64,000 nucleotides of DNA, taken from assembly GCF_000315625.1 (NCBI RefSeq), contig NW_005434626.1, positions 135,448 to 199,447 on the forward strand, read 5' to 3'. The DNA comes from Guillardia theta CCMP2712 (taxonomy: Eukaryota; Protista; Cryptophyta). Below, in pieces: positions 3,001-14,400 of the stretch. The notes below the pieces were generated by a model, which was not told the origin of the DNA, made no database searches, and was given only the letters and a program-made list of their open reading frames with translations. Position 1 is the first letter of the stretch, and every line of letters begins with the position of its first letter. The position numbers were made by a program, and so were the translations under genes.

Positions 3001-5890
3001 ACACACAAAACACAAGCCCCAGTAATGATCCGTCTCACCTGCCGTCGAGAACGATGATCCCCCACTGTATCGATGACGCTCTGAAGACCAGCTTCGTTGA
3101 GCATTGACCGAATCCTCCTCACCGAACTGAGTGCGAGTAAGGTTGTCTTGCGCCGTGGGAAGCTTGGAGGATCGGCGTTTGCAGGTCTGGAGATGATGTG
3201 CAGCAACGGAAGGATCGAGCTCGCGCTGACATCCATCACATTCCGTCGGACACTGGCAGATCGGCATGCCATGGAGATAGCAGTCGAGCATCTGAGCATA
3301 GCGGTGCGGGAAGGCCCTGAGGGGATAGCAATGGATTTACTGGCAGAAGGTAAAAAGATACCCATAGGATTTACTGGCAGAAGGTAAAAAGTGCCTCAAG
3401 CAAAACAAAGCAGGAACAAGCTGAACCGGCAGGCACACAGTCCACAGCGAGAAGCTGCATGTGCCTCGTAGCTCGAGACTCGCATCGGAGAGTGGCCGCC
3501 GCTCAGAAGGAAGGCATAGGATTTACTGGCAGAAGGTAAAAAGTGCCTCAAGCAAAACAAAGCAGGAACAAGCTAAACCTCCAGGCACACAGTCCACATA
3601 CTTTCTGCCAGTAAATCCTAAACTACAGCGAGAAGCTGCACAAACACACACAAAACACAAGCCCGAAAAGAACCAGCACTGCTGGCACCCAGACGCGGCA
3701 GCGCCAGCCCAAGCGCGAAGCCGCGCAGACAAGCAGCCTAAGGGTCAAGCAATCAAGCACCAAGCAGCAGGAGCATGCAGGAGGAATAAAATCCCTCACA
3801 CGCGATACCCGGAGGCAGCCGACTGACCACTGTCAGTCGAGACGTCCGCTGCCGGCACAAAGCGGGCGGCCGCGGACGGAGAAAGGGCAGCCGCCGACAA
3901 GGAGCCGGCGCTGCCCGGGGGTCCGCCTGGGGCAGCGGACGGAGGGAGGCTGGACACAGGAACACGGTACCGCTCGAGGTAGTCCTCCTCGCTAGCCTCC
4001 GAGTCAGCGGTAGCCGAGTCAGCGGTAGCCGCCCGTGACGGCGGCGACGCCGCGGCAATGCCCAAGGACCGGCGTGACCCGACCGATGCCGGGGAGGAAG
4101 CAGGCGAGCTCGGACCAGCAGCAAGCACCCCACGGTGGTGTCGAGCTCTCCGGAGGCACCCGACGTCACAGTGAGGGACGGAGACGCCTCGCCAGCTCCG
4201 CGCCGATCGTCGGGGCCACTCGAAGGGTGTCCCCCATCGGAGTCGGAGACCTCCGGCGAAGACTCCTCGGGCGACTCGACAAAGTCCGAGGAGGAGCTGT
4301 CCTGTGGCTCGAGAAGTGCTTGCGCCCGCAAGGGCGTCATGCGCCTCGCACCAGACAAGAGCGCTTCCAGCGTCAGCTGCATGGTGAGGCGCTGATAGGT
4401 GGCGGCGCGTTTGCGAGCCAAGACCTCAGCAGCACAAACGCCGCATCCTCAAGAGGCATCGAGCGCTGAGCAATGATGTCCGCGAGATACCAGATGAAGC
4501 GGAGGGTGTCCGGGATGCAGGGTACCGTCCGTCGAGATGGCAAGAGGGATGAACGCTCGAGGAGGAGTAGTCATGGCATATGCAGCGCGATGTTTGCGAA
4601 TCTTCTCAGACGCTGCAACATGGAGGGCGTCGAGGTTGACCTCCCCCCACTTGGTCAGGTCGGCAGAGCTACCAATGTAAGGGATGTAAGGGTGGACCAA
4701 CGTCACGTCCGCCATCAAGCCCTGCTTTGTTTTGCTTGAGGCACTTTTTACCTTCTGCCAGTACTCCCATCCTCATGGCCGCAAAAAGAAGGGGGATATT
4801 CACATCCCTGGGATCCGAGATCAAGTACTAACAGACAGCCGTCTCGATCGAGTCCGAACTGAATCGCTCGAGGGTGAGACGAGAGGAAGTGCTGGTCAAG
4901 AGATGAGCGAATCGCTGCCAACGCAAGCTTCGTCGCGAGTCGAAGGTTTGCGAACCCGATACTCCTCGACGAATGGCCGCCGCAGGGCAGGAATAAGAAG
5001 ATCTGGCATCCGGCCAAGAAGGACCCCTTGGAGGATATGCAGAGCTTCAAAGCTGCAGGATGCTGCCGCAGCAGCTGCTGCTCAGTGCTGAGGTGGCTGC
5101 CGCCGCCGTTGCTGCTTCTGCCGTTGTCGCCGCCTGCTGGGGTGGTTGCAGCTGCTCCGACTCAGGGCCTGCGCCGCGGCTGCTGCTGTGGGAGAGACGA
5201 CGGCTGTAGGTTCCGTCGGACAATGGATTTGCTGGCAGAGGGTTCCGAGAGGCAGTACGGATTTACTGGCAGAAGGTAAAAAGTGCCTCAAGCAAAACAA
5301 AGCAGGAACAAGCTAAACCTCCAGGCACACAGTCCACAGCGAGAAGCTGCTCAAACACACACAAAACACAAGCCCGAAAAGAACCAGCACTGCTGGCACC
5401 CAGACGCGGCACCGCCAGCCCAAGCGCGAAGCCGCGCAGACAAGCAGCCGAAGGGTCAGGCAATCAAGCAACAACCGAGGTGACCGCCGAAGTTCAGGCT
5501 GCTGCTGCTGTTGCGGCTGTTGCGGCGGCTGCCGGGGCGGCCAGTGTCCTTGGGGCGGTGGAGGCTGCCGCGCCCCCTCAGGTTGCCTCAGGCTTCTTCC
5601 CATGAGTTTCTGCAGCACTGGGCAGATAGGAAAAGTGCCTCAAGCAAAACAAAGCAGGAACAAGCTGAACCGGCAGGCACACAGTCCACAGCGAGAAGCT
5701 GCACAATCACACACAAAACACAAGCCCGAAAAGAACCAGCACTGCTGGCAACCAGACGCGGCCGGGCATCGCCAGCCCAAGCGCGAAGCCGCGCAGACAA
5801 GCAGCCGAAGGGACCTGGCAAGCAATCAAGCAACAAGCAGCAGGAGCAGTAGGAGCATGCAGGAGGAATAAAATCCCTTAGACGCGAATA
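1..5890 (-). mobile_element. Nested array of truncated RLE-clade (CRE/NeSL-like) non-LTR retrotransposon fragments
   Basis: Near-identical kb-scale blocks recur (137-990, 1358-2510, 3515-4720). Minus-strand fragments join into C-x2-C-x9-H-x3-C (CDGCQRELDPSVAAHHLQTC), AHDNL, KGDIHIP, ADVTLVHP, EKIRKH and FIPLAISTDG. This is the zinc knuckle / RHD / PD..D..K order of restriction-like endonucleases. The terminal motif (ca)taggatttactggcagaaggtaaaaag recurs many times. No intact RT is visible. Confidence 0.8.
1001..1172. other. Assembly gap (N run)
   Basis: Run of N inside the repeat array. Confidence 0.99.
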
Positions 5891-6500
5891 AGCCTTGAAG
5901 ACAAGTCAGCCAAAGGACCCGGGCTGCCTCGGCCCGGCGCCAGGCCGGGCTCAGAGCTCAAGCCTTGAAGGCTTCACTGAACTCGGCCGGCCCGGCGGCG
6001 CCAGTCGGAGGTCCTAGGGTGGTGCTAGCGGCGGTATTATGTGTTGCTATGAGCACGCTGCGAGTCAGTGGTCCTATGACCAATATAGGGCCCTCGGTAC
6101 TGACATAGTGCTATGACCCGGTCATAACCCCCACCGTTCAAAAGTACATCGTAAACTTCGTATTTTCAAAGGATTCAAATTTTGTCAATATGATTTGAAT
6201 ATAGATATGAAAAAACGGTGGTAACATTTCAAGTCTAATAAGATACATCACAAACCAGGGGACAGGAAATCGGTAGGGAAGTTTCAAGGGGTGGGGGCAG
6301 GGACTCGAACGGAATGTTGAGGGTGGGTGGGTGGAGAGTACCCAGGTTTTAATGTTTGCAGTACCGGACAAAACGAAGACAGAGGGGTGGGGGTCATGAA
6401 AAATGGGGGTAAGCAAAAGGCCGAGGGTACTTAAGTTGTGGGGTTGAAGGGTGGTCGCGGGGCCCGACTTGAAATGCACGGGCGGGGATGAAGTAAAGAA
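5885..6500. promoter_or_regulatory. Intergenic module: CCGG/GAGTCA-rich block, then AT-rich TTCAAA block, then GGGT-rich block, upstream of the phosphatase gene
   Basis: Similar motif blocks recur at 16140-16450, 18980-20100, 28700-29200, 46560-48080 and 53930-54345. A regulatory role is inferred from position. Confidence 0.35.
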
Positions 6501-6533
6501 GAAGAAGGAGGGGTGAAGAGGAAGAGGAGGAGC

Positions 6534-9515
6534 ATGACCAGTCGATCTCTCCCTTCTGCTCTCACTTCCAAGGTTGACTCCAGATCTGAAAGTCCCTCAC
6601 AATCGCGCCATAGCCTTGAAAGCCATGCAAGCAGTAGGGCAACACGATGGCGGTCATCAATCGACTCTTACAACCTGGAAGACTGTCCTTCGTTTATACA
6701 AGCTCTTCGCAGCGTTCCAGCAAGAGACATCTGTGCAGCAACTCAAATCCCGCGCATTATAAGCAACATGTCCATCATCGACGTTCTGAGAGAGTTCGAA
6801 AGAGGAGAAACGGTGATAGCGCGAAAGATCCCTTCGTCGCATGACACAGAGGTACACGCTGAGGATGTCTTGTGGTCACGGCAAAATTTCATGGAGGTTT
6901 GCTTTACAAGCCAGAGATCGTTCTTGGACACAGTGGCAACCATCTTTTCGGCCGTACAGCCACTTCCGACTGTCAGCGACTCTGACACGCTGGATAATGT
7001 TTTCTTCACGATGCTCCAGTACGGAGTGAGTGAGGTTGGGGTGGTCAGCTCGAATGGTAATATTGTAGGATTGATACATTTTCGAGAGTTTTTTCAGTAT
7101 ATTCTTGCACAGGTTGAAGAAGATTTGCCGAACTTGGAAAAGAAGGCACAAGATAAGTTTTCGGAAGTAGAAGAGCAGGACTCTTTGAAGGCAGTGAAGA
7201 CACTTCGAGGAGGAGCCGGAATCTTAAGTGGCCTCGAAGCAATCAAGAGCAAGTATCAAACGAAAGAGTTTGGACGAGTTCAGCATGCTGCCCAGCAGTG
7301 GGTGGAAGCCGCGTGGACAGAGCTTTTGATTCTGACGCTTGTCTGTCTGGATTTCTCTTGTACAGTCGTCGAGTTGTCAACGAATGAAAACGAGGGCTCA
7401 TACAATTCTCCTCTGAATGTCGTCACCGGTTGTATTCTCCTTGTTTACACGTTTGAAGCAAGCGTGAGAGTCTACGGATATCGACTTTCATTGCTTTGGC
7501 GCATTTTAGATCTTTTCGATCTTATTATCATTGTGGCTTCAGTAACGGTGTTTATTCTCGTGATTTCATCAACATTTGGGCGGCGAGCAACTACTTTCAC
7601 CTTTGCAAGAATTTTAAGATGCTTGCGCTTGGTCAAAATATTCAGAAGGCTGAGGAAAACGATCCTTTCATCAAAGACTCGCTATCAAAAGGATGGATTC
7701 AATCTCGACTTGGCGTACATAACACCCACATGCATCGCGATGTCACTTCCTGCAGTTGGAACTGAAGCAATCTTTGCAAATTCTCTTGAGGAGGTTCAAA
7801 GGTTCTTCTACTTGAAGCACCCTGCCAATCATCTCATCTTCAATGTCTGCTCTGAAAGATCTTATGATGCCAGGTTGTTTGGAAACAGAGTGGAAAGGAT
7901 TCCGACAGTGAATCATAATCCTCCCCTCCTCTCGCAGATTGTTTCCTTCCTGGAGCACACGGCATCGTATCTCGAAGATGACTCAAATCACGTGGTTGCG
8001 GTCCACTGCAGGAACGGAAAGGGGAGGACAGCTGTGATGGTTTGTGCCTGGCTGGTTTACTGCAAATTCTCTCCGAATGTCAACGATGCCATGGAGTGGT
8101 TCGCATGGAAACGACTTAGGAAATCCAGCCTTCTTCATGGAGATGAGCAGATCTTAACCCCAAGTCAGCTCCGTTACCTCAACTATGTGCAAGTCATGTG
8201 TGAGAACGGCCAGTTCGAAACCCGAGGTCTTACAATAGAGTCAATCTCCATCTCCTCATGCCCTCGAGTGGATCTTAGCGGAAATTGCAACATCTGGTTC
8301 AGCATCGAAGAATGTCAAAACGAAGTTTTCAACTCAAGCAAAGTGATGGGAGTGAAGAGCATGTCGCAGAAAGACTCAAACACTGTGTTCGAGGGCATCA
8401 AGACGACTGTCGCAGAGGATGTTCGAATCACCTTCTACGACAGAGATCAGGCATCCCAGACTGACCGGATCATCTTCTACACCTGCTTTCATACAGCCTT
8501 CGCTCCTGGCTCGAAGTTGGAGATTTCTAAAGACTTTCTCGACATGGCATGTGTAGACAAAGGCAATGCCATCTTTGACTCGGACTTCAAGATCTCCATC
8601 TTGTTCAAGCACAACGACAGAGAGCTTCCTGTGCCAGTTAGAAAACTTCGAAAGATCAGCCAGCAACTGCAGGCAGTCGCGTTAAAACAACGTGGCAGGA
8701 CAGCAGCTTCGTCTGCGGTTGGTGTCTTGAACGCGATTACTGTAGAAGGAGGAACAGACGGAGAGTACAACCTGGGAGATGCGAAGCTCAAGGTGGACGA
8801 ATTCTCTCTCGCACCTTTTGACGACTCCTTGTGTGTCGCCTCCGATCCTAAGGTCAGCCACGAGACCGTCAGGCTCTTCGCATTCGCAGGCAGCACCGTG
8901 CCGAGCCACGCTCAGTCGAAGAGGCTTGTGAGCCACTACCGAGGGAGCGAGAAGGAAGGTATCGAGATCTCTCACCTCCTCACTGGCGCTGGGCTGGCCA
9001 ACCGCCTACGACGGACAGCGAGGCATGCTGTGTCAGGGAACAAGCGGCGGTTTGTAGAGGACGATTTCGACCTCGACCTGACCTACATCACACCGCGTCT
9101 CATCGCCATGGGCTTCCCGTCTAAGGGAGTGGAGGGCGCGTACCGCAATTCGTCGGACGAGGTCTACCGTTTCTTCCAGCAGCGTCACTCCGCTCACTTT
9201 CGCATCATCAACTTATGCTCCGAACGCGCTTACCGCCTCGACTTGTTCCATGGCAGCGTCGCACGATATCCATTCCCAGACCACAACCCCCCGCCAATGG
9301 AGCTGATCCTCCCTTGCTGCATGCACATCCATCGCTTTCTCCAAGACGACCAAGACAACGTGGTGGCGGTTCACTGCAAGGCTGGGAAGGGACGGACCGG
9401 CCTCATAATTGTCGCTTACCTGATGTTCGGAGGGCTGGCAAGAGTGAGTCCTTGTTGCCGTGCGGGGGCATGAGATGAGATGAGAGAGGGATACTGCCTG
9501 TCTATGTTGTTATGG

Positions 9516-9546
<31 letters not shown>

Positions 9547-11241
9547 CAGTGCTCCTGCTCCTGCTCCTGCTGCTGTTGCTCCTCCTCCTATTGTTGCAGC
9601 GCTGGTAGTGGAGGGTTGATTCTGACATGAGGCTGTAGAGCGCAAGGATGGCGCGGATCTACTACGACACGACTCGGACTCATGACGGGAAAGGGCTTAC
9701 CATCATCTCACAGGTGAAGTCAAGGCGAACAACCTGAGCTGAGGCGATGATGACAATTCGCGTTTCAGATCCGCTACGTCCACTACTTCGAGGAGCAGCT
9801 GAGGCGAATCAAAGCAGGAGAGGTTCACAGCTACACGGAGACGAAGAGCCCAGCAGTGATGCTGAAGATGCTTCGCTTCAATTCAATCCCTCACTTTTCT
9901 CGCGATGGAGGGTGAGGAAACTGCTAGGCCTGCAGTCGTTTGACATGCAGCAGGTGTGCTCCTTCCTTCAACGTATTCGTTGTGAATGAGCGAGACCACG
10001 AGGTCTACAAGATTTTTTCGACCAAAGAGAAGGGAAAGGTCGAGCATCTGAAGCCTTCTGTGAAGGTCTGATCACCGATACAATTCTCACTCCTCCTTTC
10101 TCCTCTCACCACCGCCTTGCAGCGATGGGAGTATAGTTTCCCCGAGGGAGGACTGCGAGTAGCCGGCGATCTTGAGTTCGAGTTTTGGGATCAAGACACC
10201 TTCTCGAATCGGCGGTCTGCCTGTCGTCATTCTCCTCCTGCTGACACTCATGGCCAGTATGATGCATTTCTGGATCCACACTCACTTCATGAGCCGCCCT
10301 GCCTCTGAAATGTCCGGCAAGGCTCGACAACTCAGCCCCGACGAGTGCGCGAGCCTTAAACTTGAAGTCCAAGTCTCTTTTACCTCCCATGCTCGCTCGT
10401 CTCACTGTATGCAGGAAAATGTCAAGTGCTGGTGCTTGAGCCTGTCAAAACACGAGATTGACCAAGCGGCTCGTGACAAGAAACATGTTCACTTCGATGA
10501 AGACTTTAAGGTATTCTGCTGATGGTGGTGGTGGTTCTGCTCCACCACCACCACCACCACCACCTCCTCCTCCTCCTCCTCCTCCTCCGTGCTCTGCTCG
10601 CATTTAGCTGCTAGTATACTCTTCCTTGTCCTCCTTGTTCTCCTCGCTGTGACTCTCTGTGCTCTGCGTCAGATTTGACGAGGGAATAATGCAGGTCGAT
10701 GTGATTTTCATGGAGCTTGCTGGTGAGAAAGGAACGGGTCAGCTGCTCAAAGACGCCGAGCAGACAGCCATGAGCAAGGGAATGAAGATGAGGATGCATG
10801 GGAATCTTTATCTTGAGCGAGAGCTCTACAAGAAGCATTGCTTGGAGAAATGTGTAATTGGTGAGACATCTCCCTTGATCTTAACTCTTTGCCTGTATCT
10901 TGTTGCTGTCCTCACCGTGACTGTTTCTCTGTCCGTGACTGTATCTGATCGCTTCGCAGGTGAAACTCCGACTCTCTTCGAGACCTGGTTGCTTCAAAGC
11001 CAACAAGACACTGAAATCTTCGGCTCTCAACAGATTGCAACCGAATTGCGCGACGATCTTGAACCAGGCGTAGGTGAGCGATGAGCTTCGTCTGCCCTCT
11101 CGTCTCTCATCATTTTTATCAGATTCGTCCATTAACGGCAGGTTTGACACCGACAGCGAGGTCGATCATGAGCCTCTGAACCAGCGCGACATGTCCCTCG
11201 CGAGTCTGGCCACGAGAGAAGACGAGGAGGGTGAGAGTTGA
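6534..11241 (+). CDS. CBS-pair + voltage-sensor domain + two tandem PTEN-like phosphatase/C2 modules (VSP/TPTE-like), multi-exon
   Basis: The 986-aa first exon has a CBS signature (LPTVSDSDTLDNVFFTMLQYGVSEVGVVSSNGNIVGLIH) and four TM helices with S4 FARILRCLRLVKIFRRLRK. It continues RYQKDGFNLDLAYIT, HCRNGKGRT, a C2 domain, NKRRFVEDDFDLDLTYIT, PDHNPP and HCKAGKGRTG. Later exons give GLTIISQ/IRYVHYF and a second C2. Stop TGA at 11239-11241. Confidence 0.9.
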
Positions 11242-11441
11242 GCTTGTTCCTGTTCTCTCTCATCCTCTCTTTGCAGAACAATGTTGCGCACCCAACACTC
11301 CTCACGCTGTTTGTGTCTGATCGCTCAGTCTAGCCTCTCTATGCTAGCCTCTCTTAAATGAGAGCACGTGAAACTTTAAGAACTTTCACGTCAGAATGCT
11401 GCTGCTTTTGTCGTTCCTTCCTTCTCCTACCTTCTCCCGTC

Positions 11442-14400
11442 CTACCTGCGCCTCTCTTTCATCGTCTTCATCTGCGGCATCCGAAGCTCATTTGCTTGAC
11501 TCCGAGACGCTTCCAGCAGCAGCTGTAGGCTTCTGTTCCGTTTCATCGCCTCCTGGTGCTGCTGCTGCATCATCCGCAACCTCACGCTCGTAATGTGGGT
11601 CGCCGCGAGCTCTTGCTCCCTCTTCGCCATCGCCCTGTGGCCACGTCACCAGCAAATCAACAAAAGCTTCTTGCACTCACAACTCGTCCGCTATCCGACC
11701 TCCCACCTTCCTCGCCTTCACCTCCAGGTCCTGCTCAGCTGTCACCTGCTGGTTCATGCGCATGGGAGATGACCTCGAGAGCATCGTGCTCCTCCTCTCC
11801 TCTCCCTTCCTCGAGCTCGTAGTGAACCCCTCTCCTCGCCACCTCCTCCATCTTTCGCTGCAGGTCGTTCTTCTCCTTCTTCAGGGCCTCCAGCTCCTCC
11901 GTCAGGTTCTCCACCTGGTTCGTTAGCTGCACTTGCAGGGAGTCCTTCACCGACCCCTTCCACAGCGCCAGCGCCCATGCGACCGACTGATTCTGCCAGC
12001 GATACTTGACGCGCTCCAAGCGCTGAGCAGTGGAGGGGCGCTGACGAGACTTGTAGGAGGAGAAACGGCAGTCGGCGACAGAGACGTCAAAGTCGGAAGG
12101 GTCGCTGGAGATGAAGGTGAGGAGGAGCAGGTTGGCATCTCTTACCAAGCTGTCCGCTATGAAGCGTGAGAGCGCTGAGTCTCCCAGCGAGGCCATCGGG
12201 TCGCTCTGCTTGATGTGCTTGCGCTCAAGAAACTTCATGACGGCGACCAGTGACTGGTCGTGCTCCTCCACGAAGCTCGTCGCCTCCGATGCCACATCCT
12301 CCCTCTCCGCTGCGTTCCCCAGCACCACCACCCTAAGAGTGCCGATCTCTCTCGTCCCGTCTACCTTAGACTTGCGAACCAAGGTCATGCTCAGCACCCT
12401 ATGCGGGTGTTGCACCAGCTCGCCCTCAGATGTTCTGCTTCCTGTCTTCGACAGCCTCTTTGCTCGCGCGACTTTCTCACTCGCACGTCTGTCCAGCTCC
12501 TCCTGCTCCAGCCTCAGTCGCCCTGCTGACTTGTCGAGTGCCTCTTGCAAGCTTTCTAGCACACTTTGAATCTGCTCGCCGATTTCTTGTCCAAACTTTT
12601 CCTCCTGCTCCTCCTGCTCCTCCTGCTCCTCCTGCTCCTCCTGCTCCTCCTGCTCCTCGTCATCGTTGTTCGAGGCATCGTCATGATCTTGTGGCTGCTC
12701 CTTTGCATCGTCTGTCGATTTGTTTCCGCGCTCTCTGAGCATGTCGCTCAAGGTCACAAGCGACTCCAGAGCGTTGGGAGGCTCCGCGGCCTTGCCGGGG
12801 ATGAAGTTGACGACTTGCTCTTGGTACACCTGCCAAAGTATCAGAGCTGGATGCTCAGCTGAGAAAGACAAGTCTGCCTCAGAGAAATCGACCAGCAGCT
12901 TCACTTGCTCTTCCTCTGCTTTGCCTGACTCCAGCAGACCCGCGAGCTTGTCCATGTAGAGGTCGTGCATGTACCTGACCACCAGCGGAAAGAGCCCCGA
13001 CTCACTTGCCTGCTGCTTCCTCCTCGACGCCTCTGCTGCCATGCCGGTCGCAAACTTTTGTTTCCCGCTGTTGCGTCCCCCGTGAATGATGAGGCAACAA
13101 GACTTCCAGAGGAGGATTCTAGACATGTGGGGGAGGAGCTGGTGGAAGATGTCTTCATCGGAGATCTCGGGCCCCATCACTCTGTCGAAGTCAAACACCT
13201 CGAGCATGCCGCGCCTGTTCTCGAACCCCTCCCTCAGCTTCATCATCAGCTGCTGCCCTGACTCCAGGCGTCGGAACAGCGACGCTTCCTTCTCGGCCCC
13301 AACGACGGCGAAGGAGTGGAAGGAGGCGAAGGTCAGCGCGTCCAACCGATGCTGCAGCAGTCTCTGGGCAGTGATAGCAACCGACAGCGATCGCTCCCCG
13401 TCCCTCAGCTCTGCTGAGGTTCTAGACAAGGTGGAGGCCATGAGCATGGTAGCGCGCTGCAAGTCTCTGATCAGCGGCATAAATATTCCTTCCGAGTACG
13501 CTTTATAGTCAGAAAGCAGCAGCTTCGAAGCTTGCTTCAGCTCTTCCGTGCTCTTCCTGATGTTCTTGACGCTTCCTCCTTTGCTCTTGACATCACCGTC
13601 ACACGAGGACTAAGCAAGCTTCCTCTCTCACCGCTCTCAGCAGCAGTCTCTCAGTCTTGTTCTTGATCGCGCTTGTTTTCTTCTCTGCGTTGTCTGTTTG
13701 CAAACCTCTCCCCTTGGCTTCTAGCTCGACTTTGAGTCGCTCGTTCACCCGCGTCACTTGGTTCAGCTTGTCGACATACTCTTGGGCGAGAAACTCCAAG
13801 TGCGTCACATGGTGGTGGGCCATGGCGACCTCTCGCTCCAGCTTCTCCACCTTGTCACTCTTTTCCCTGAGAGCCGCTAGCTCGGCCTGCAGCACCTCCA
13901 CGCGTCTATCTTCCTCCACCTGCTTCACGTTGAAACTGCTCGCGGAAGAGACCATGGAGGTCTCGATCTTGAGAGAGGCATCACGTCAGAACTTGGCACT
14001 ACAAGGAGCAAGAAGTACCCCCTGTCTCTCGTCTTTGTCGGGTGGAAGAGGGGGTACCGCCTGTGGCACCAGAGCACCTGAAGGTGAAGGCTTAGGCGCT
14101 CTTGCTGCATTCACGTAGCGTCACCAGGTTTAGAATCTTGCTGACTCGCCTCCTCCCTCTTGTCTTGGCTCGCAGCTGGCAGCTCTCGCTGCTGCATCTT
14201 CTTCTCGAGGGCTCGGACTTGCATCTCCTTCTCTCTCATCCTCATCCTCAGCTCCTCGTTGGCTTCCGTCGTCTCCTCTAGCGCTCTCTTGGTTGCCAGC
14301 AGCTGCTCGCATAGCTCTTTGCATTTCTCGCATTCGTTACTTTCACTGTCTTGTCTCTGCAGAAGACCTTTGATGTCTCGGTTGGAAGCAAGAATCTGAT

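What the first reader, a model, noticed from the sequence alone, without database searches (positions are those of the whole stretch)
6534..11241. Voltage-sensing phosphatase with extra CBS pair and two tandem PTEN modules
Seen: CBS pair, S1-S4 sensor (Arg/Lys about every third residue, about 7600-7660), PTEN/C2, PTEN/C2. Established: VSP/TPTE proteins are best characterised in animals and have one sensor and one phosphatase; CBS pairs bind adenine nucleotides. Inference: an algal membrane enzyme that integrates voltage and energy charge into phosphoinositide signalling. I do not recognise this architecture from characterised proteins.
Basis: partly seen in the sequence, partly recalled or inferred. 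Interest (0 to 1): 0.75.

Follow-up and report, generated by a model that had tools for sequence, protein, structure and literature searches.

The report
Algal voltage-sensing phosphatase with added PTEN
The alga Guillardia theta has an intact gene for a membrane voltage sensor joined to a ligand-sensor-like domain and two lipid-phosphatase units in a row, a layout found in other cryptophyte algae but described in no paper I could find.

Summary
Window 6534-11241 (+) is a 10-exon gene, 1313 codons, with all introns GT-AG. It encodes, in order:
- a CBS pair;
- an S1-S4 voltage-sensor domain with an R-R-R-K-R ladder in S4 (7608-7658);
- a VSP-type phosphatase plus C2;
- a conserved linker of about 140 residues;
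- a complete PTEN-type phosphatase plus C2.

Full or partial relatives occur in Hanusia, Geminigera and Cryptomonas and in three unnamed transcript contigs. Four relatives carry both modules in one open reading frame.

A tree and an AU test place module 1 with all sensor-linked phosphatases and module 2 with ordinary PTENs. This argues against a cryptophyte-specific internal duplication and fits a PTEN-type module added to a VSP.

Module 1 of Guillardia keeps the catalytic Cys and Arg. It has lost the WPD-loop Asp (now Asn) and carries an altered P-loop. Module 2 has PTEN's exact P-loop, its WPD-loop Asp and a PTEN-like TI loop.

The "energy charge" reading is untested. The only RNA I could lay here is a spliced, polyadenylated antisense transcript, so the sense splicing rests on homology.

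Verdict: a real, uncharacterised variant of the voltage-sensing phosphatase family. The same scan had already noted other VSP variants elsewhere in this genome.

The parts
6534..11241 (+). Whole coding region, 10 exons: 6534-9443, 9639-9713, 9769-9911, 9954-10065, 10123-10214, 10258-10372, 10415-10510, 10695-10860, 10960-11073, 11123-11241 (TGA at 11239-11241). 3942 nt, 1313 codons. Introns are 42-195 nt, all GT-AG.
   Evidence: reading phases are consistent, and exons 2-8 align to P0002 residues 836-1084 with no gap at any junction; tblastn shows colinearity. The start Met matches the Hanusia phi ORF start. The exons were never joined for any search.
6534..6668 (+). Ser/Arg-rich N-terminal stretch (residues 1-45), probably disordered, with no hydrophobic signal peptide.
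   Evidence: Translation. Low pLDDT at the start of the model.
6711..7106 (+). CBS pair (Bateman module), about residues 60-191. CBS2 is residues 142-191 (nt 6957-7106).
   Evidence: Pfam CBS 31.8 bits. All 30 ESM Atlas look-alikes are CBS proteins. The AF2 model shows beta-alpha-beta-beta-alpha twice. Foldseek PDB hits are CBS pairs. The family profile against PDB gives E 1.4e-15.
7311..7670 (+). Voltage-sensor domain S1-S4, by model helices: S1 7311-7379, S2 7410-7499, S3 7503-7568, S4 plus its extension 7584-7670. The basic ladder R359, R362, R365, K368, R371 lies at 7608-7658.
   Evidence: Pfam Ion_trans. PDB sequence hits to fish VSP 9c49, Ci-VSP sensor 4g7v (E 7e-7), and TPC1, Cav, Nav and Kv sensors. 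Conserved S1 Asp, S2 aromatic-x-x-Glu and Arg, and S3 Asp. The AF2 model has four long helices; most 10-residue pLDDT blocks there are 77-94, with one loop block at 68.
7656..7700 (+). S4-to-phosphatase linker with a phosphoinositide-binding-motif-like basic stretch (KTILSSKTRYQKDGF). It is 4 residues shorter than in coral VSPs in the multiple alignment, and 10 shorter than fish VSP in the pairwise alignment.
   Evidence: Alignment A3. HMMER alignments to 9c49 and Ci-VSP.
7698..8228 (+). Phosphatase domain 1 (VSP-type). P-loop HCRNGKGRT, with Cys492 at 8007-8009. The WPD-loop Asp is replaced by Asn460 (7911-7913). The TI-loop position reads LTPSQ.
   Evidence: Careful tree. The AF2 model matches PTEN and Ci-VSP with TM 0.8-0.89 by target.
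8226..8609 (+). C2 domain 1.
   Evidence: Pfam PTEN_C2 81.6 bits. Model and Foldseek.
8610..9023 (+). Inter-module linker (about residues 693-830) with a conserved core (FSLAPFDDSL...SKRLVSHYR) and no known domain.
   Evidence: No Pfam hit on 8610-9230. The core can be seen conserved in P0002 and P0003 (sequences).
9027..9846 (+). Phosphatase domain 2 (PTEN-type), spread over the end of exon 1, exon 2 and the start of exon 3. N-terminal NKRRF motif at 9039-9053, Asp916 at 9279-9281, P-loop HCKAGKGRTG with Cys948 at 9375-9377, TI loop TIISQ in exon 2.
   Evidence: PDB hit to PTEN 1d5r at E 6e-54 over query residues 833-967. Exon-wise alignment to P0002. Signature table.
9847..10715 (+). C2 domain 2, split over exons 3-8.
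   Evidence: The P0002 equivalent scores PTEN_C2 at 73.2 bits. Exon 7 alone gives a weak PTEN_C2 hit of 16.5 bits. Exon-wise colinearity.
10716..11241 (+). C-terminal tail with the conserved motif LYLERELY. The last exon has an unresolved alternative donor at 11231.
   Evidence: Reading of the sequence.
7538..9506 (-). Spliced, polyadenylated antisense RNA over the gene. Minus-strand introns at 8183-8233, 8726-8771, 8847-8974 and 9081-9141; 3' end at about 7538. It probably continues upstream through 9597-10509 and beyond.
   Evidence: joints with CT..AC ends in RNA contigs X1 and X2 and none in DNA run X12; a poly(T) loose end before 7538; contig 9597-10509 keeps all + strand introns.

Best explanation
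This is a real, selectively maintained nuclear gene of the cryptophyte Guillardia theta. [quoted passage not shown]

Shown here:
- the domain order and the gene model (the model rests on homology);
- a voltage-sensor domain with the full set of sensing charges and countercharges;
- module 1 belonging to the clade of sensor-linked phosphatases;
- module 2 belonging to the PTEN-type clade, with PTEN's exact P-loop, its WPD-loop Asp and a PTEN-like TI loop;
- conservation of the layout across cryptophytes.

Inferred mechanism:
1. Depolarisation moves S4. The short basic linker brings module 1 onto the inner leaflet, as in Ci-VSP.
2. In the Guillardia/Hanusia/P0002/Cryptomonas branch, module 1 has lost its WPD-loop Asp. 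It then acts mainly as a slow or substrate-holding, voltage-driven docking unit.
3. The tethered PTEN-type module 2 does most of the chemistry, with a 3-phosphatase signature.
4. In the Geminigera branch both modules look fully catalytic. There the pair could remove the 5- and 3-phosphates in sequence.
5. The CBS pair lies on the same cytosolic face. It adds ligand-dependent or dimerisation-dependent control of the sensor.
For: Architecture:
- Pfam on exon 1.
- One continuous alignment from S1 to the end of C2 against fish VSP 9c49, E 1.5e-56.
- Phosphatase domain 2 against PTEN 1d5r, E 6e-54.

Sensor:
- An R-R-R-K-R ladder, and conserved S1 Asp, S2 aromatic/Glu/Arg and S3 Asp.
- Sequence hits to the Ci-VSP, TPC1, Cav, Nav and Kv sensors.
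- AF2 model with pLDDT 87.3 and four long helices followed by the phosphatase and C2, matching PTEN and Ci-VSP at TM 0.8-0.89.

CBS pair.

Single gene:
- A 2910-nt open exon runs from the CBS pair into the P-loop of module 2.
- P0002, P0003 (Geminigera), P0020 and P0126 (Cryptomonas) carry the sensor and both modules in one ORF.

Selection: 89% amino-acid identity to Hanusia phi over 970 residues.

Origin of the modules:
- In the careful tree a 98/98 branch separates all 13 sensor-linked phosphatase domains from 31 others. Cryptophyte module 2 is among the others, as a clade with 100/99 support.
- The AU test rejects module 1 plus module 2 as one clade, p 0.0138.

Active sites:
- Sensor-linked domains outside this Asp-less branch mostly read HCKGGKGRTG (one HCKSGKGRTG, one HCKGGKGRSG) and lack the TI pair.
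- PTEN types read HCKAGKGRTG and TIPSQ.
- Guillardia module 1 reads HCRNGKGRT with Asn for the Asp. Module 2 reads HCKAGKGRTG, with the Asp and TIISQ.

Literature:
- Ala126 and Thr-Ile 167/168 set PTEN's 3-site specificity, and a VSP sensor can drive a PTEN catalytic domain (PMC6182344).
- Ci-VSP D331A is nearly inactive and slows the return of the sensor, as expected for substrate trapping (PMC4322731).
Against: - No sense-strand RNA support was obtained in Guillardia. The RNA contigs over the gene are antisense, and the 3'-end library showed no reads on 5997-9936 and almost none up to 10724.
- The Asp-to-Asn change does not prove inactivity. Cys and Arg are kept, and module 1 is 96% identical between Guillardia and Hanusia.
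- How movement of module 1 would control module 2 across a linker of about 140 residues is unknown. I could not model the tandem protein.
- The S4-to-phosphatase linker is shorter than in animal VSPs, so coupling may differ.
- The CBS ligand is unknown, and Pfam misses the first CBS motif.
- The AU grouping was named after the tree had been seen.
Confidence: 0.55

Rival explanations
1. Both phosphatase modules are active in Guillardia as well. The enzyme is a voltage-switched two-step phosphatase: module 1 removes the 5-phosphate and module 2 the 3-phosphate, taking PI(3,4,5)P3 to PI4P. Asn simply replaces Asp with tolerable loss of rate.
For: - The Cys-x5-Arg motif is kept in module 1 of every family member.
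- Module 1 is under strong constraint between Guillardia and Hanusia, 96% identity.
- The Geminigera-branch proteins keep a canonical VSP active site.
Against: - The WPD-loop Asp is lost in the whole Guillardia/P0002/Cryptomonas clade (Asn, Asn, Lys), together with P-loop changes.
- Terminal branches of module 1 there are longer than those of module 2: 0.47 against 0.07, 0.35 against 0.07, 0.55 against 0.34. The Guillardia module 2 row is truncated to 126 of about 171 columns.
- Ci-VSP D331A is inactive on PI(4,5)P2 in cells (PMC4322731).
Confidence: 0.22
2. The four-helix domain is only a membrane anchor with no useful voltage range. The protein is then a constitutively membrane-tethered PTEN regulated through its CBS pair or by other means.
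For: - Some VSP-family sensors give weak or no signals in heterologous cells. Human VSP2 is one example (PMC12652588).
- The S4-to-phosphatase linker is shortened.
Against: - Five regularly spaced basic residues in S4 and all countercharges are conserved across cryptophyte lineages as distant as 37-51% identity overall. A passive anchor would not need them.
- The PD tree places module 1 with the other sensor-linked phosphatases.
Confidence: 0.12
3. The locus is silent or decaying in Guillardia, or the model wrongly merges two genes. Only the antisense RNA would then be functional.
For: - Only antisense, minus-strand-spliced RNA was seen over 7538-9506.
- Contig 9597-10509 keeps all + strand introns.
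- DNA run X12 carries an extra C after 9274 that would break the frame.
Against: - A 2910-nt open exon, and nine further exons with correct phases and GT-AG ends.
- 89% identity to Hanusia with no stop.
- Single-ORF transcripts with both modules exist in three other cryptophyte data sets.
- The extra C sits in a CCC run at 8x depth and is absent from both RNA runs, so a homopolymer error is likely.
- Short contigs at 6391-6625 and 7336-7495 lie beyond the antisense 3' end and may be sense RNA.
Confidence: 0.06

Closest known systems
Voltage-sensing phosphatases of animals (Ci-VSP, Danio rerio VSP 9c49, human TPTE/TPTE2)
   Same: S1-S4 sensor with no pore domain, a basic S4-to-phosphatase linker, a PTEN-like phosphatase, then C2. 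One continuous alignment over all of these (E 1.5e-56). Module 1 sits in the same clade as coral VSP phosphatase domains.
   Different: An N-terminal CBS pair. A second, PTEN-type phosphatase-C2 module behind the first. In Guillardia module 1 the P-loop is HCRNGKGRT (animal VSPs: HCKGGKGRTG) and the WPD-loop Asp is Asn. The linker is shorter.
PTEN (1d5r)
   Same: Module 2 has the N-terminal NKRR motif, the FPDHNPP loop with its Asp, PTEN's exact P-loop HCKAGKGRTG, a TI loop (TIISQ against TIPSQ) and a C2 domain.
   Different: It is not a free cytosolic protein. It is the C-terminal half of a membrane protein, tethered behind a sensor-driven VSP module. The regulatory tail also differs.
Engineered voltage-controlled PTEN (Ci-VSPTEN / PTENCiV; PMC6182344, PMC4379879)
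   Same: A VSP sensor placed upstream of a PTEN-type catalytic unit. This shows in principle that a sensor can switch PTEN chemistry.
   Different: In the chimera the sensor is joined directly to PTEN. Here a whole VSP-type phosphatase-C2 module and a linker of about 140 residues lie between them, and the protein is natural.
CBS-pair-regulated membrane proteins (CNNM/CorC, MgtE, ClC channels) and AMPK gamma/Snf4
   Same: A cytosolic Bateman module attached to a membrane protein. The best fold matches are the CorC, Snf4 and AMPK-gamma CBS pairs.
   Different: About 10-20% sequence identity. The module sits at the N-terminus of a voltage sensor, and no ligand is known. I found no report of a CBS pair on a VSP.
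Receptor protein-tyrosine phosphatases with tandem D1-D2 domains (from my own knowledge)
   Same: Two Cys-based phosphatase domains in tandem behind a membrane segment, one of them catalytically weakened.
   Different: In those receptors the membrane-distal D2 is the weak one and the substrates are proteins. Here the membrane-proximal domain is the altered one, and both modules are lipid-phosphatase type with C2 domains.
Other VSP-like genes of the same genome noted earlier in this scan (s1-437054, s1-436897)
   Same: The same organism and the same VSP core with extra sensor-type domains. Related database proteins appear in my searches, for example P0109 with Ion_trans plus cNMP-binding.
   Different: Those carry cyclic-nucleotide-binding, PH or other domains.

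Membership tests
Voltage-sensing phosphatase (VSP/TPTE) | S1-S4 voltage-sensor domain with basic residues at every third position of S4, plus acidic and aromatic countercharges | tested here: met
   ARILRCLRLVKIFRRLRK; S1 Asp, S2 Tyr-x-x-Glu and Arg, S3 Asp are conserved. Hits to the Ci-VSP sensor 4g7v at E 7e-7 and to channel sensors. Four confident helices in the model.
Voltage-sensing phosphatase (VSP/TPTE) | No pore domain (S5-S6); S4 leads through a basic linker directly into the phosphatase | tested here: met
   The Ion_trans match covers profile positions 3-142 of 241 only. The linker KTILSSKTRYQKDGFNLDL follows S4.
Voltage-sensing phosphatase (VSP/TPTE) | PTEN-like phosphatase with the Cys-x5-Arg P-loop, followed by a C2 domain | tested here: met
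   HCRNGKGRT; PTEN_C2 81.6 bits. Model against PTEN and Ci-VSP gives TM 0.8-0.89. Module 1 falls in the clade of sensor-linked phosphatase domains, 98/98.
Voltage-sensing phosphatase (VSP/TPTE) | WPD-loop Asp and Gly in the P-loop (HCKGGKGRTG) in the sensor-linked phosphatase | tested here: not met
   Guillardia module 1 has Asn for the Asp and Asn for the Gly. The Geminigera-branch homologues P0003 and P0022 meet both, and P0004 keeps the Asp with Ser for the Gly. This bears on catalytic competence. The tree still places the domain in the family.
Voltage-sensing phosphatase (VSP/TPTE) | Voltage-dependent sensing currents and phosphoinositide turnover | not testable with these tools
   Needs electrophysiology with PIP reporters.
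PTEN-type phosphatase module (module 2) | N-terminal basic PIP2-binding motif, WPD-loop Asp, P-loop HCKAGKGRTG, TI loop, C2 domain | tested here: met
   NKRRF, FPDHNPP and HCKAGKGRTG in exon 1. TIISQ in exon 2. C2 shown by exon-wise colinearity with P0002, whose stretch scores PTEN_C2 at 73 bits. Clade placement.
CBS pair (Bateman module) | Two consecutive CBS motifs, each beta-alpha-beta-beta-alpha, packing as a pair | tested here: met
   AF2 secondary structure. Foldseek aligns 130-160 columns to whole CBS pairs, TM by target 0.57-0.76. Profile hits span both motifs in Snf4 and PAE2072. The model has only moderate confidence (pLDDT 68.8).
CBS pair (Bateman module) | Binding of an adenosine-containing ligand in the cleft | not testable with these tools
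   An acidic residue stands at the usual ribose-contact position in both motifs (HAEDVL; GLIHFREF, Asp in P0002 and P0003). This comes from reading the alignments and is suggestive only.

The most novel reading that the evidence does not exclude
Cryptophytes have a natural voltage-gated PTEN. A VSP-type module has lost its WPD-loop Asp and serves as a voltage-driven, lipid-holding clutch. It delivers a canonical PTEN 3-phosphatase to the membrane, under further control by a nucleotide-binding CBS pair. In a flagellate whose membrane voltage is set by channelrhodopsins, this would turn light-evoked electrical signals and metabolic state into 3-phosphoinositide signals.
Probability: 0.2. Interest if true: 0.8.

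Novelty: new variant of a known kind. Interest (0 to 1): 0.6.

Why it matters
All functionally characterised voltage-sensing phosphatases I found are animal proteins with one sensor and one catalytic module.

This family shows three things:
- the sensor-linked phosphatase clade extends to cryptophyte algae;
- it has been extended there with a PTEN-type module, and possibly with a ligand-sensing domain;
- within the family the sensor-linked active site has changed while the added PTEN module stayed canonical.

That gives a natural test case for two questions. One is how a voltage sensor controls a phosphatase that is not directly attached to it. The other is whether 3-phosphoinositide signalling can be put under voltage control in nature, which so far has been done only by engineering.

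It could also supply new sensor and enzyme parts for voltage-controlled lipid tools.

Tried and rejected
1. Reads. One call to lay reads on 5800-11700 was meant to confirm the + strand introns. Every joint had CT..AC ends, meaning minus-strand introns, and the contig over 9597-10509 kept the + strand introns. The sense splicing therefore stays homology-based.

2. Pfam on single small exons gave nothing except a weak PTEN_C2 hit on exon 7. My first exon coordinates for exons 5 and 6 were wrong and were corrected.

The second C2 domain is therefore argued exon by exon and through P0002.

4. The AU test on the 95-row tree did not finish in about 10 minutes. I replaced it with a 44-row careful tree and test.

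5. An alignment meant for a model of the whole tandem protein put the VSP phosphatase domains under module 2. I dropped it and modelled the sensor plus module 1 of the window's own protein instead. The relative arrangement of the two modules is therefore unmodelled.

6. An Hv1-type proton channel or a pore-forming channel was rejected. There is no S5-S6, I see no Hv1-like Trp-containing S4 motif by eye, and a phosphatase follows S4 directly.

7. A recent internal duplication of the PTEN module was rejected by the tree and the AU test.

8. Literature searches for cryptophyte VSPs, CBS with VSP, and tandem PTEN found nothing relevant.

9. The word searches had already found the family. Restriction of the architecture to cryptophytes is therefore provisional.


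Full report
WHAT IS THERE

The region holds one long open frame on the + strand (6513-9473; first ATG at 6534). Pfam finds on it, in order:
- a CBS domain;
- the first half of an ion-transport domain, profile positions 3-142 of 241, which is S1-S4 only;
- a dual-specificity/PTEN-type phosphatase;
- a PTEN C2 domain at 81.6 bits;
- a second phosphatase that is cut off by the end of the frame.

Downstream I built nine further exons by hand and checked them. All introns are GT-AG and 42-195 nt long, and the phases are consistent. Exons 2-8 align to residues 836-1084 of the single-ORF homologue P0002 with no gap at any junction. The coding sequence is 3942 nt (1313 codons) and ends at TGA 11239-11241.

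The second C2 domain is therefore argued in two ways:
- exon by exon (exon 7 alone gives a weak PTEN_C2 hit of 16.5 bits);
- through P0002 and P0003, whose equivalent stretches score PTEN_C2 at 73 and 51 bits.

An alternative donor at 11231 would change only the last few residues. I could not resolve it.

THE ORGANISM

- The best database hit is a Hanusia phi transcript product, 89% identical over 970 residues.
- Earlier notes of this scan name the genome as Guillardia theta.
- The Hanusia ORF starts with the same Met-Thr-Ser-Arg-Ser-Leu and runs into the same first intron. This supports both the start codon and the intron position.

THE SENSOR

The stretch from S1 to the end of C2 aligns in one piece to the fish voltage-sensing phosphatase 9c49 (E 1.5e-56). 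The sensor part alone hits the Ci-VSP sensor 4g7v (E 7e-7) and the sensors of TPC1, Cav, Nav and Kv channels.

S4 reads ARILRCLRLVKIFRRLRK. Arg, Arg, Arg, Lys, Arg stand at every third position (nt 7608-7658). The S1 Asp, the S2 aromatic-x-x-Glu and Arg, and the S3 Asp are conserved in all relatives.

An AlphaFold2 model of residues 230-700, built on 23 aligned sequences, has mean pLDDT 87.3. It shows four long helices followed by the phosphatase and C2. The catalytic part matches PTEN and Ci-VSP with TM 0.8-0.89 by target.

The S4-to-phosphatase linker is 4 residues shorter than in coral VSPs in the multiple alignment, and 10 shorter than fish VSP in the pairwise alignment.

THE CBS PAIR

Pfam sees only the second motif (31.8 bits). 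Four other lines of evidence support a pair:
- All 30 language-model look-alikes in the ESM Atlas are CBS proteins of about 160 residues.
- A four-sequence AlphaFold2 model (pLDDT 68.8) shows beta-alpha-beta-beta-alpha twice.
- Foldseek returns 365 PDB hits at E<=0.001. All 50 listed are CBS pairs, including CorC 7cfh, Snf4 2nyc and AMPK gamma, aligned over 130-160 columns.
- A profile of six family members hits CBS proteins in PDB (best E 1.4e-15). Some alignments span both motifs.

The region has about the same length in the full-length relatives P0119 and P0126. Their sensor starts at 262 and 241, against 261 here. It lies before S1 and so on the cytosolic side, together with the phosphatases. 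What it binds is unknown.

TWO DIFFERENT PHOSPHATASE MODULES

I extracted every phosphatase domain from the 117 proteins collected.

In a careful tree of 44 domains, a branch with 98/98 support separates two groups:
- All 13 sensor-linked domains: coral VSPs, other protist VSP-like proteins, and cryptophyte module 1.
- The 31 others. Cryptophyte module 2 sits among these as a clade with 100/99 support.

Forcing the cryptophyte modules 1 and 2 into one clade costs 38 log-likelihood units and is rejected (AU p 0.0138). One caveat applies: I named that group after seeing the tree.

So module 2 is not a cryptophyte-specific internal copy of module 1. The result fits a PTEN-type module added to a VSP.

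The active-site table agrees:

| Group | P-loop | WPD-loop Asp | TI loop |
|---|---|---|---|
| Sensor-linked domains outside the Asp-less branch | mostly HCKGGKGRTG (one HCKSGKGRTG, one HCKGGKGRSG) | present | no TI pair |
| PTEN-type domains | HCKAGKGRTG | present | TIPSQ |
| Cryptophyte module 2 | HCKAGKGRTG | present | TIISQ |
| Module 1, Geminigera branch (P0003, P0022) | HCKGGKGRTG | present | no TI pair |
| Module 1, P0004 | HCKSGKGRTG | present | no TI pair |
| Module 1, Guillardia | HCRNGKGRT | Asn | LTPSQ |
| Module 1, P0002 | HCKSGRSRS | Asn | TTASQ |
| Module 1, Cryptomonas (P0020) | HCKSGRDRT | Lys | PMVSQ |

In the Asp-less branch Cys and Arg are always kept. There the module 1 terminal branches are longer than those of module 2: 0.47 against 0.07, 0.35 against 0.07, and 0.55 against 0.34. 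The Guillardia module 2 row is truncated to 126 of about 171 columns, which weakens the first comparison.

Module 1 is nevertheless 96% identical between Guillardia and Hanusia. It is therefore changed, not decaying.

The literature gives these differences meaning:
- Ala126 and Thr-Ile 167/168 set PTEN's 3-site specificity, while VSPs carry Gly and Glu-Thr (PMC6182344).
- Ci-VSP D331A is nearly inactive and slows the return of the sensor, as expected for substrate trapping (PMC4322731).

DISTRIBUTION

The sensor plus two modules occurs in one ORF in:
- P0002 and its longer form P0119 (a Logan transcript contig, organism not named);
- P0003, from Geminigera cryophila;
- P0020 and P0126, from Cryptomonas curvata (UniRef A0A7S0MBP1, auto-named a PIP3 3-phosphatase).

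It is also seen in part in P0022, P0004 and Hanusia P0001.

All named sources are cryptophytes. The architecture is therefore in databases but not annotated as such, and I found it in no paper.

Tandem and triple PTEN modules without a sensor also exist in other protists, some behind a PH domain. Earlier notes of this scan describe other VSP variants elsewhere in this genome.

EXPRESSION

This is the weak point.
- The two RNA-like runs that hold the locus cover 7537-11700. Every joint has CT..AC ends, which are minus-strand GT..AG introns: 8183-8233, 8726-8771, 8847-8974, 9081-9141 and 11634-11679.
- Both runs' contigs stop at 7537/7538, and in X2 the end carries a poly(T) run before 7538.
- In run X1 the contig over 9597-10509 keeps all five + strand introns there.
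- None of the joints occurs in the DNA run.

So a spliced, polyadenylated antisense RNA overlies the gene from mid-sensor to its 3' end. It is probably a long 3' extension of the convergent kinesin-like gene (ORF 11735-13480). The main poly(A) site of that gene is at 10789.

A 3'-end RNA library showed no reads on 5997-9936 and almost none up to 10724. Two short contigs, 6391-6625 and 7336-7495, lie beyond the antisense end and may be sense RNA.

The extra C in the DNA run after 9274 sits in a CCC run at 8x depth and is absent from the RNA contigs. I take it for a homopolymer error.

HOW IT MOST LIKELY WORKS

Shown: the parts, their order, their family placement and their conservation.

Inferred:
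1. Depolarisation moves S4. The basic linker brings module 1 to the inner leaflet, as in Ci-VSP.
2. In the Guillardia branch, module 1 has no WPD-loop Asp. It works mainly as a slow or substrate-holding, voltage-driven docking unit.
3. The tethered PTEN-type module 2 carries out 3-dephosphorylation.
4. In the Geminigera branch both modules may act in sequence.
5. The CBS pair adds ligand or dimerisation control.

Engineered sensor-PTEN chimeras show that a VSP sensor can switch PTEN chemistry (PMC6182344, PMC4379879). From my own knowledge, Guillardia theta is the source of several channelrhodopsins, so light-evoked voltage changes are a plausible input.

The rivals are: both modules active; the sensor as a mere anchor; and a silent or mis-joined locus. 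They are listed with their tests.

VERDICT

The enzyme class and the unusual architecture hold. The energy-charge idea is untested. The two modules differ in kind.
- This is a new variant of a known kind, the voltage-sensing phosphatases. It is conserved in cryptophytes and uncharacterised.

Noticed in passing
window 7538-9506 (-), probably on through 9597-10509 and 10596-11700: A spliced, polyadenylated antisense RNA lies over the phosphatase gene. Minus-strand GT..AG introns are at 8183-8233, 8726-8771 (one run only), 8847-8974 (one run only) and 9081-9141, and the 3' end is at about 7538. Depth is about a third of that of the neighbouring convergent gene.
   Followed up: partly
window 10789 and 11735-13480 (-): A convergent gene with a weak kinesin-motor match (26 bits, below cutoff) has its main poly(A) site at 10789. 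That places it inside the last exons of the phosphatase gene, so the two genes overlap tail to tail. There is also a minus-strand intron at 11634-11679.
   Followed up: partly
window 9275-9277: One DNA run (X12, depth 8) reads CCCC where the window and both RNA runs read CCC, just before the codon of catalytic Asp916 of module 2. A homopolymer error is most likely. If real, it would be a frameshift allele.
   Followed up: partly
window 5845-5887: Word depth in the DNA run jumps to 850-1500, against 4-8 elsewhere, and contigs break here. This looks like the edge of a high-copy repeat just upstream of the gene.
   Followed up: no
proteins P0021, P0023-P0028 (not in the window): Two or three PTEN phosphatase-C2 modules in tandem, without a voltage sensor and some behind a PH domain, occur in other protist data sets. 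I found this architecture described in no paper either.
   Followed up: partly
window 9507-9596 and 10510-10595: Introns 1 and 7 consist largely of trinucleotide repeats (CTG/CTC-type and CCA/CCT-type). Read contigs break there.
   Followed up: no
protein P0020 (Cryptomonas curvata), module 1: Its P-loop, HCKSGRDRTG, carries an Asp just before the catalytic Arg, while the WPD-loop position is Lys. From memory, myotubularins also have an Asp at that P-loop position. Not tested.
   Followed up: no
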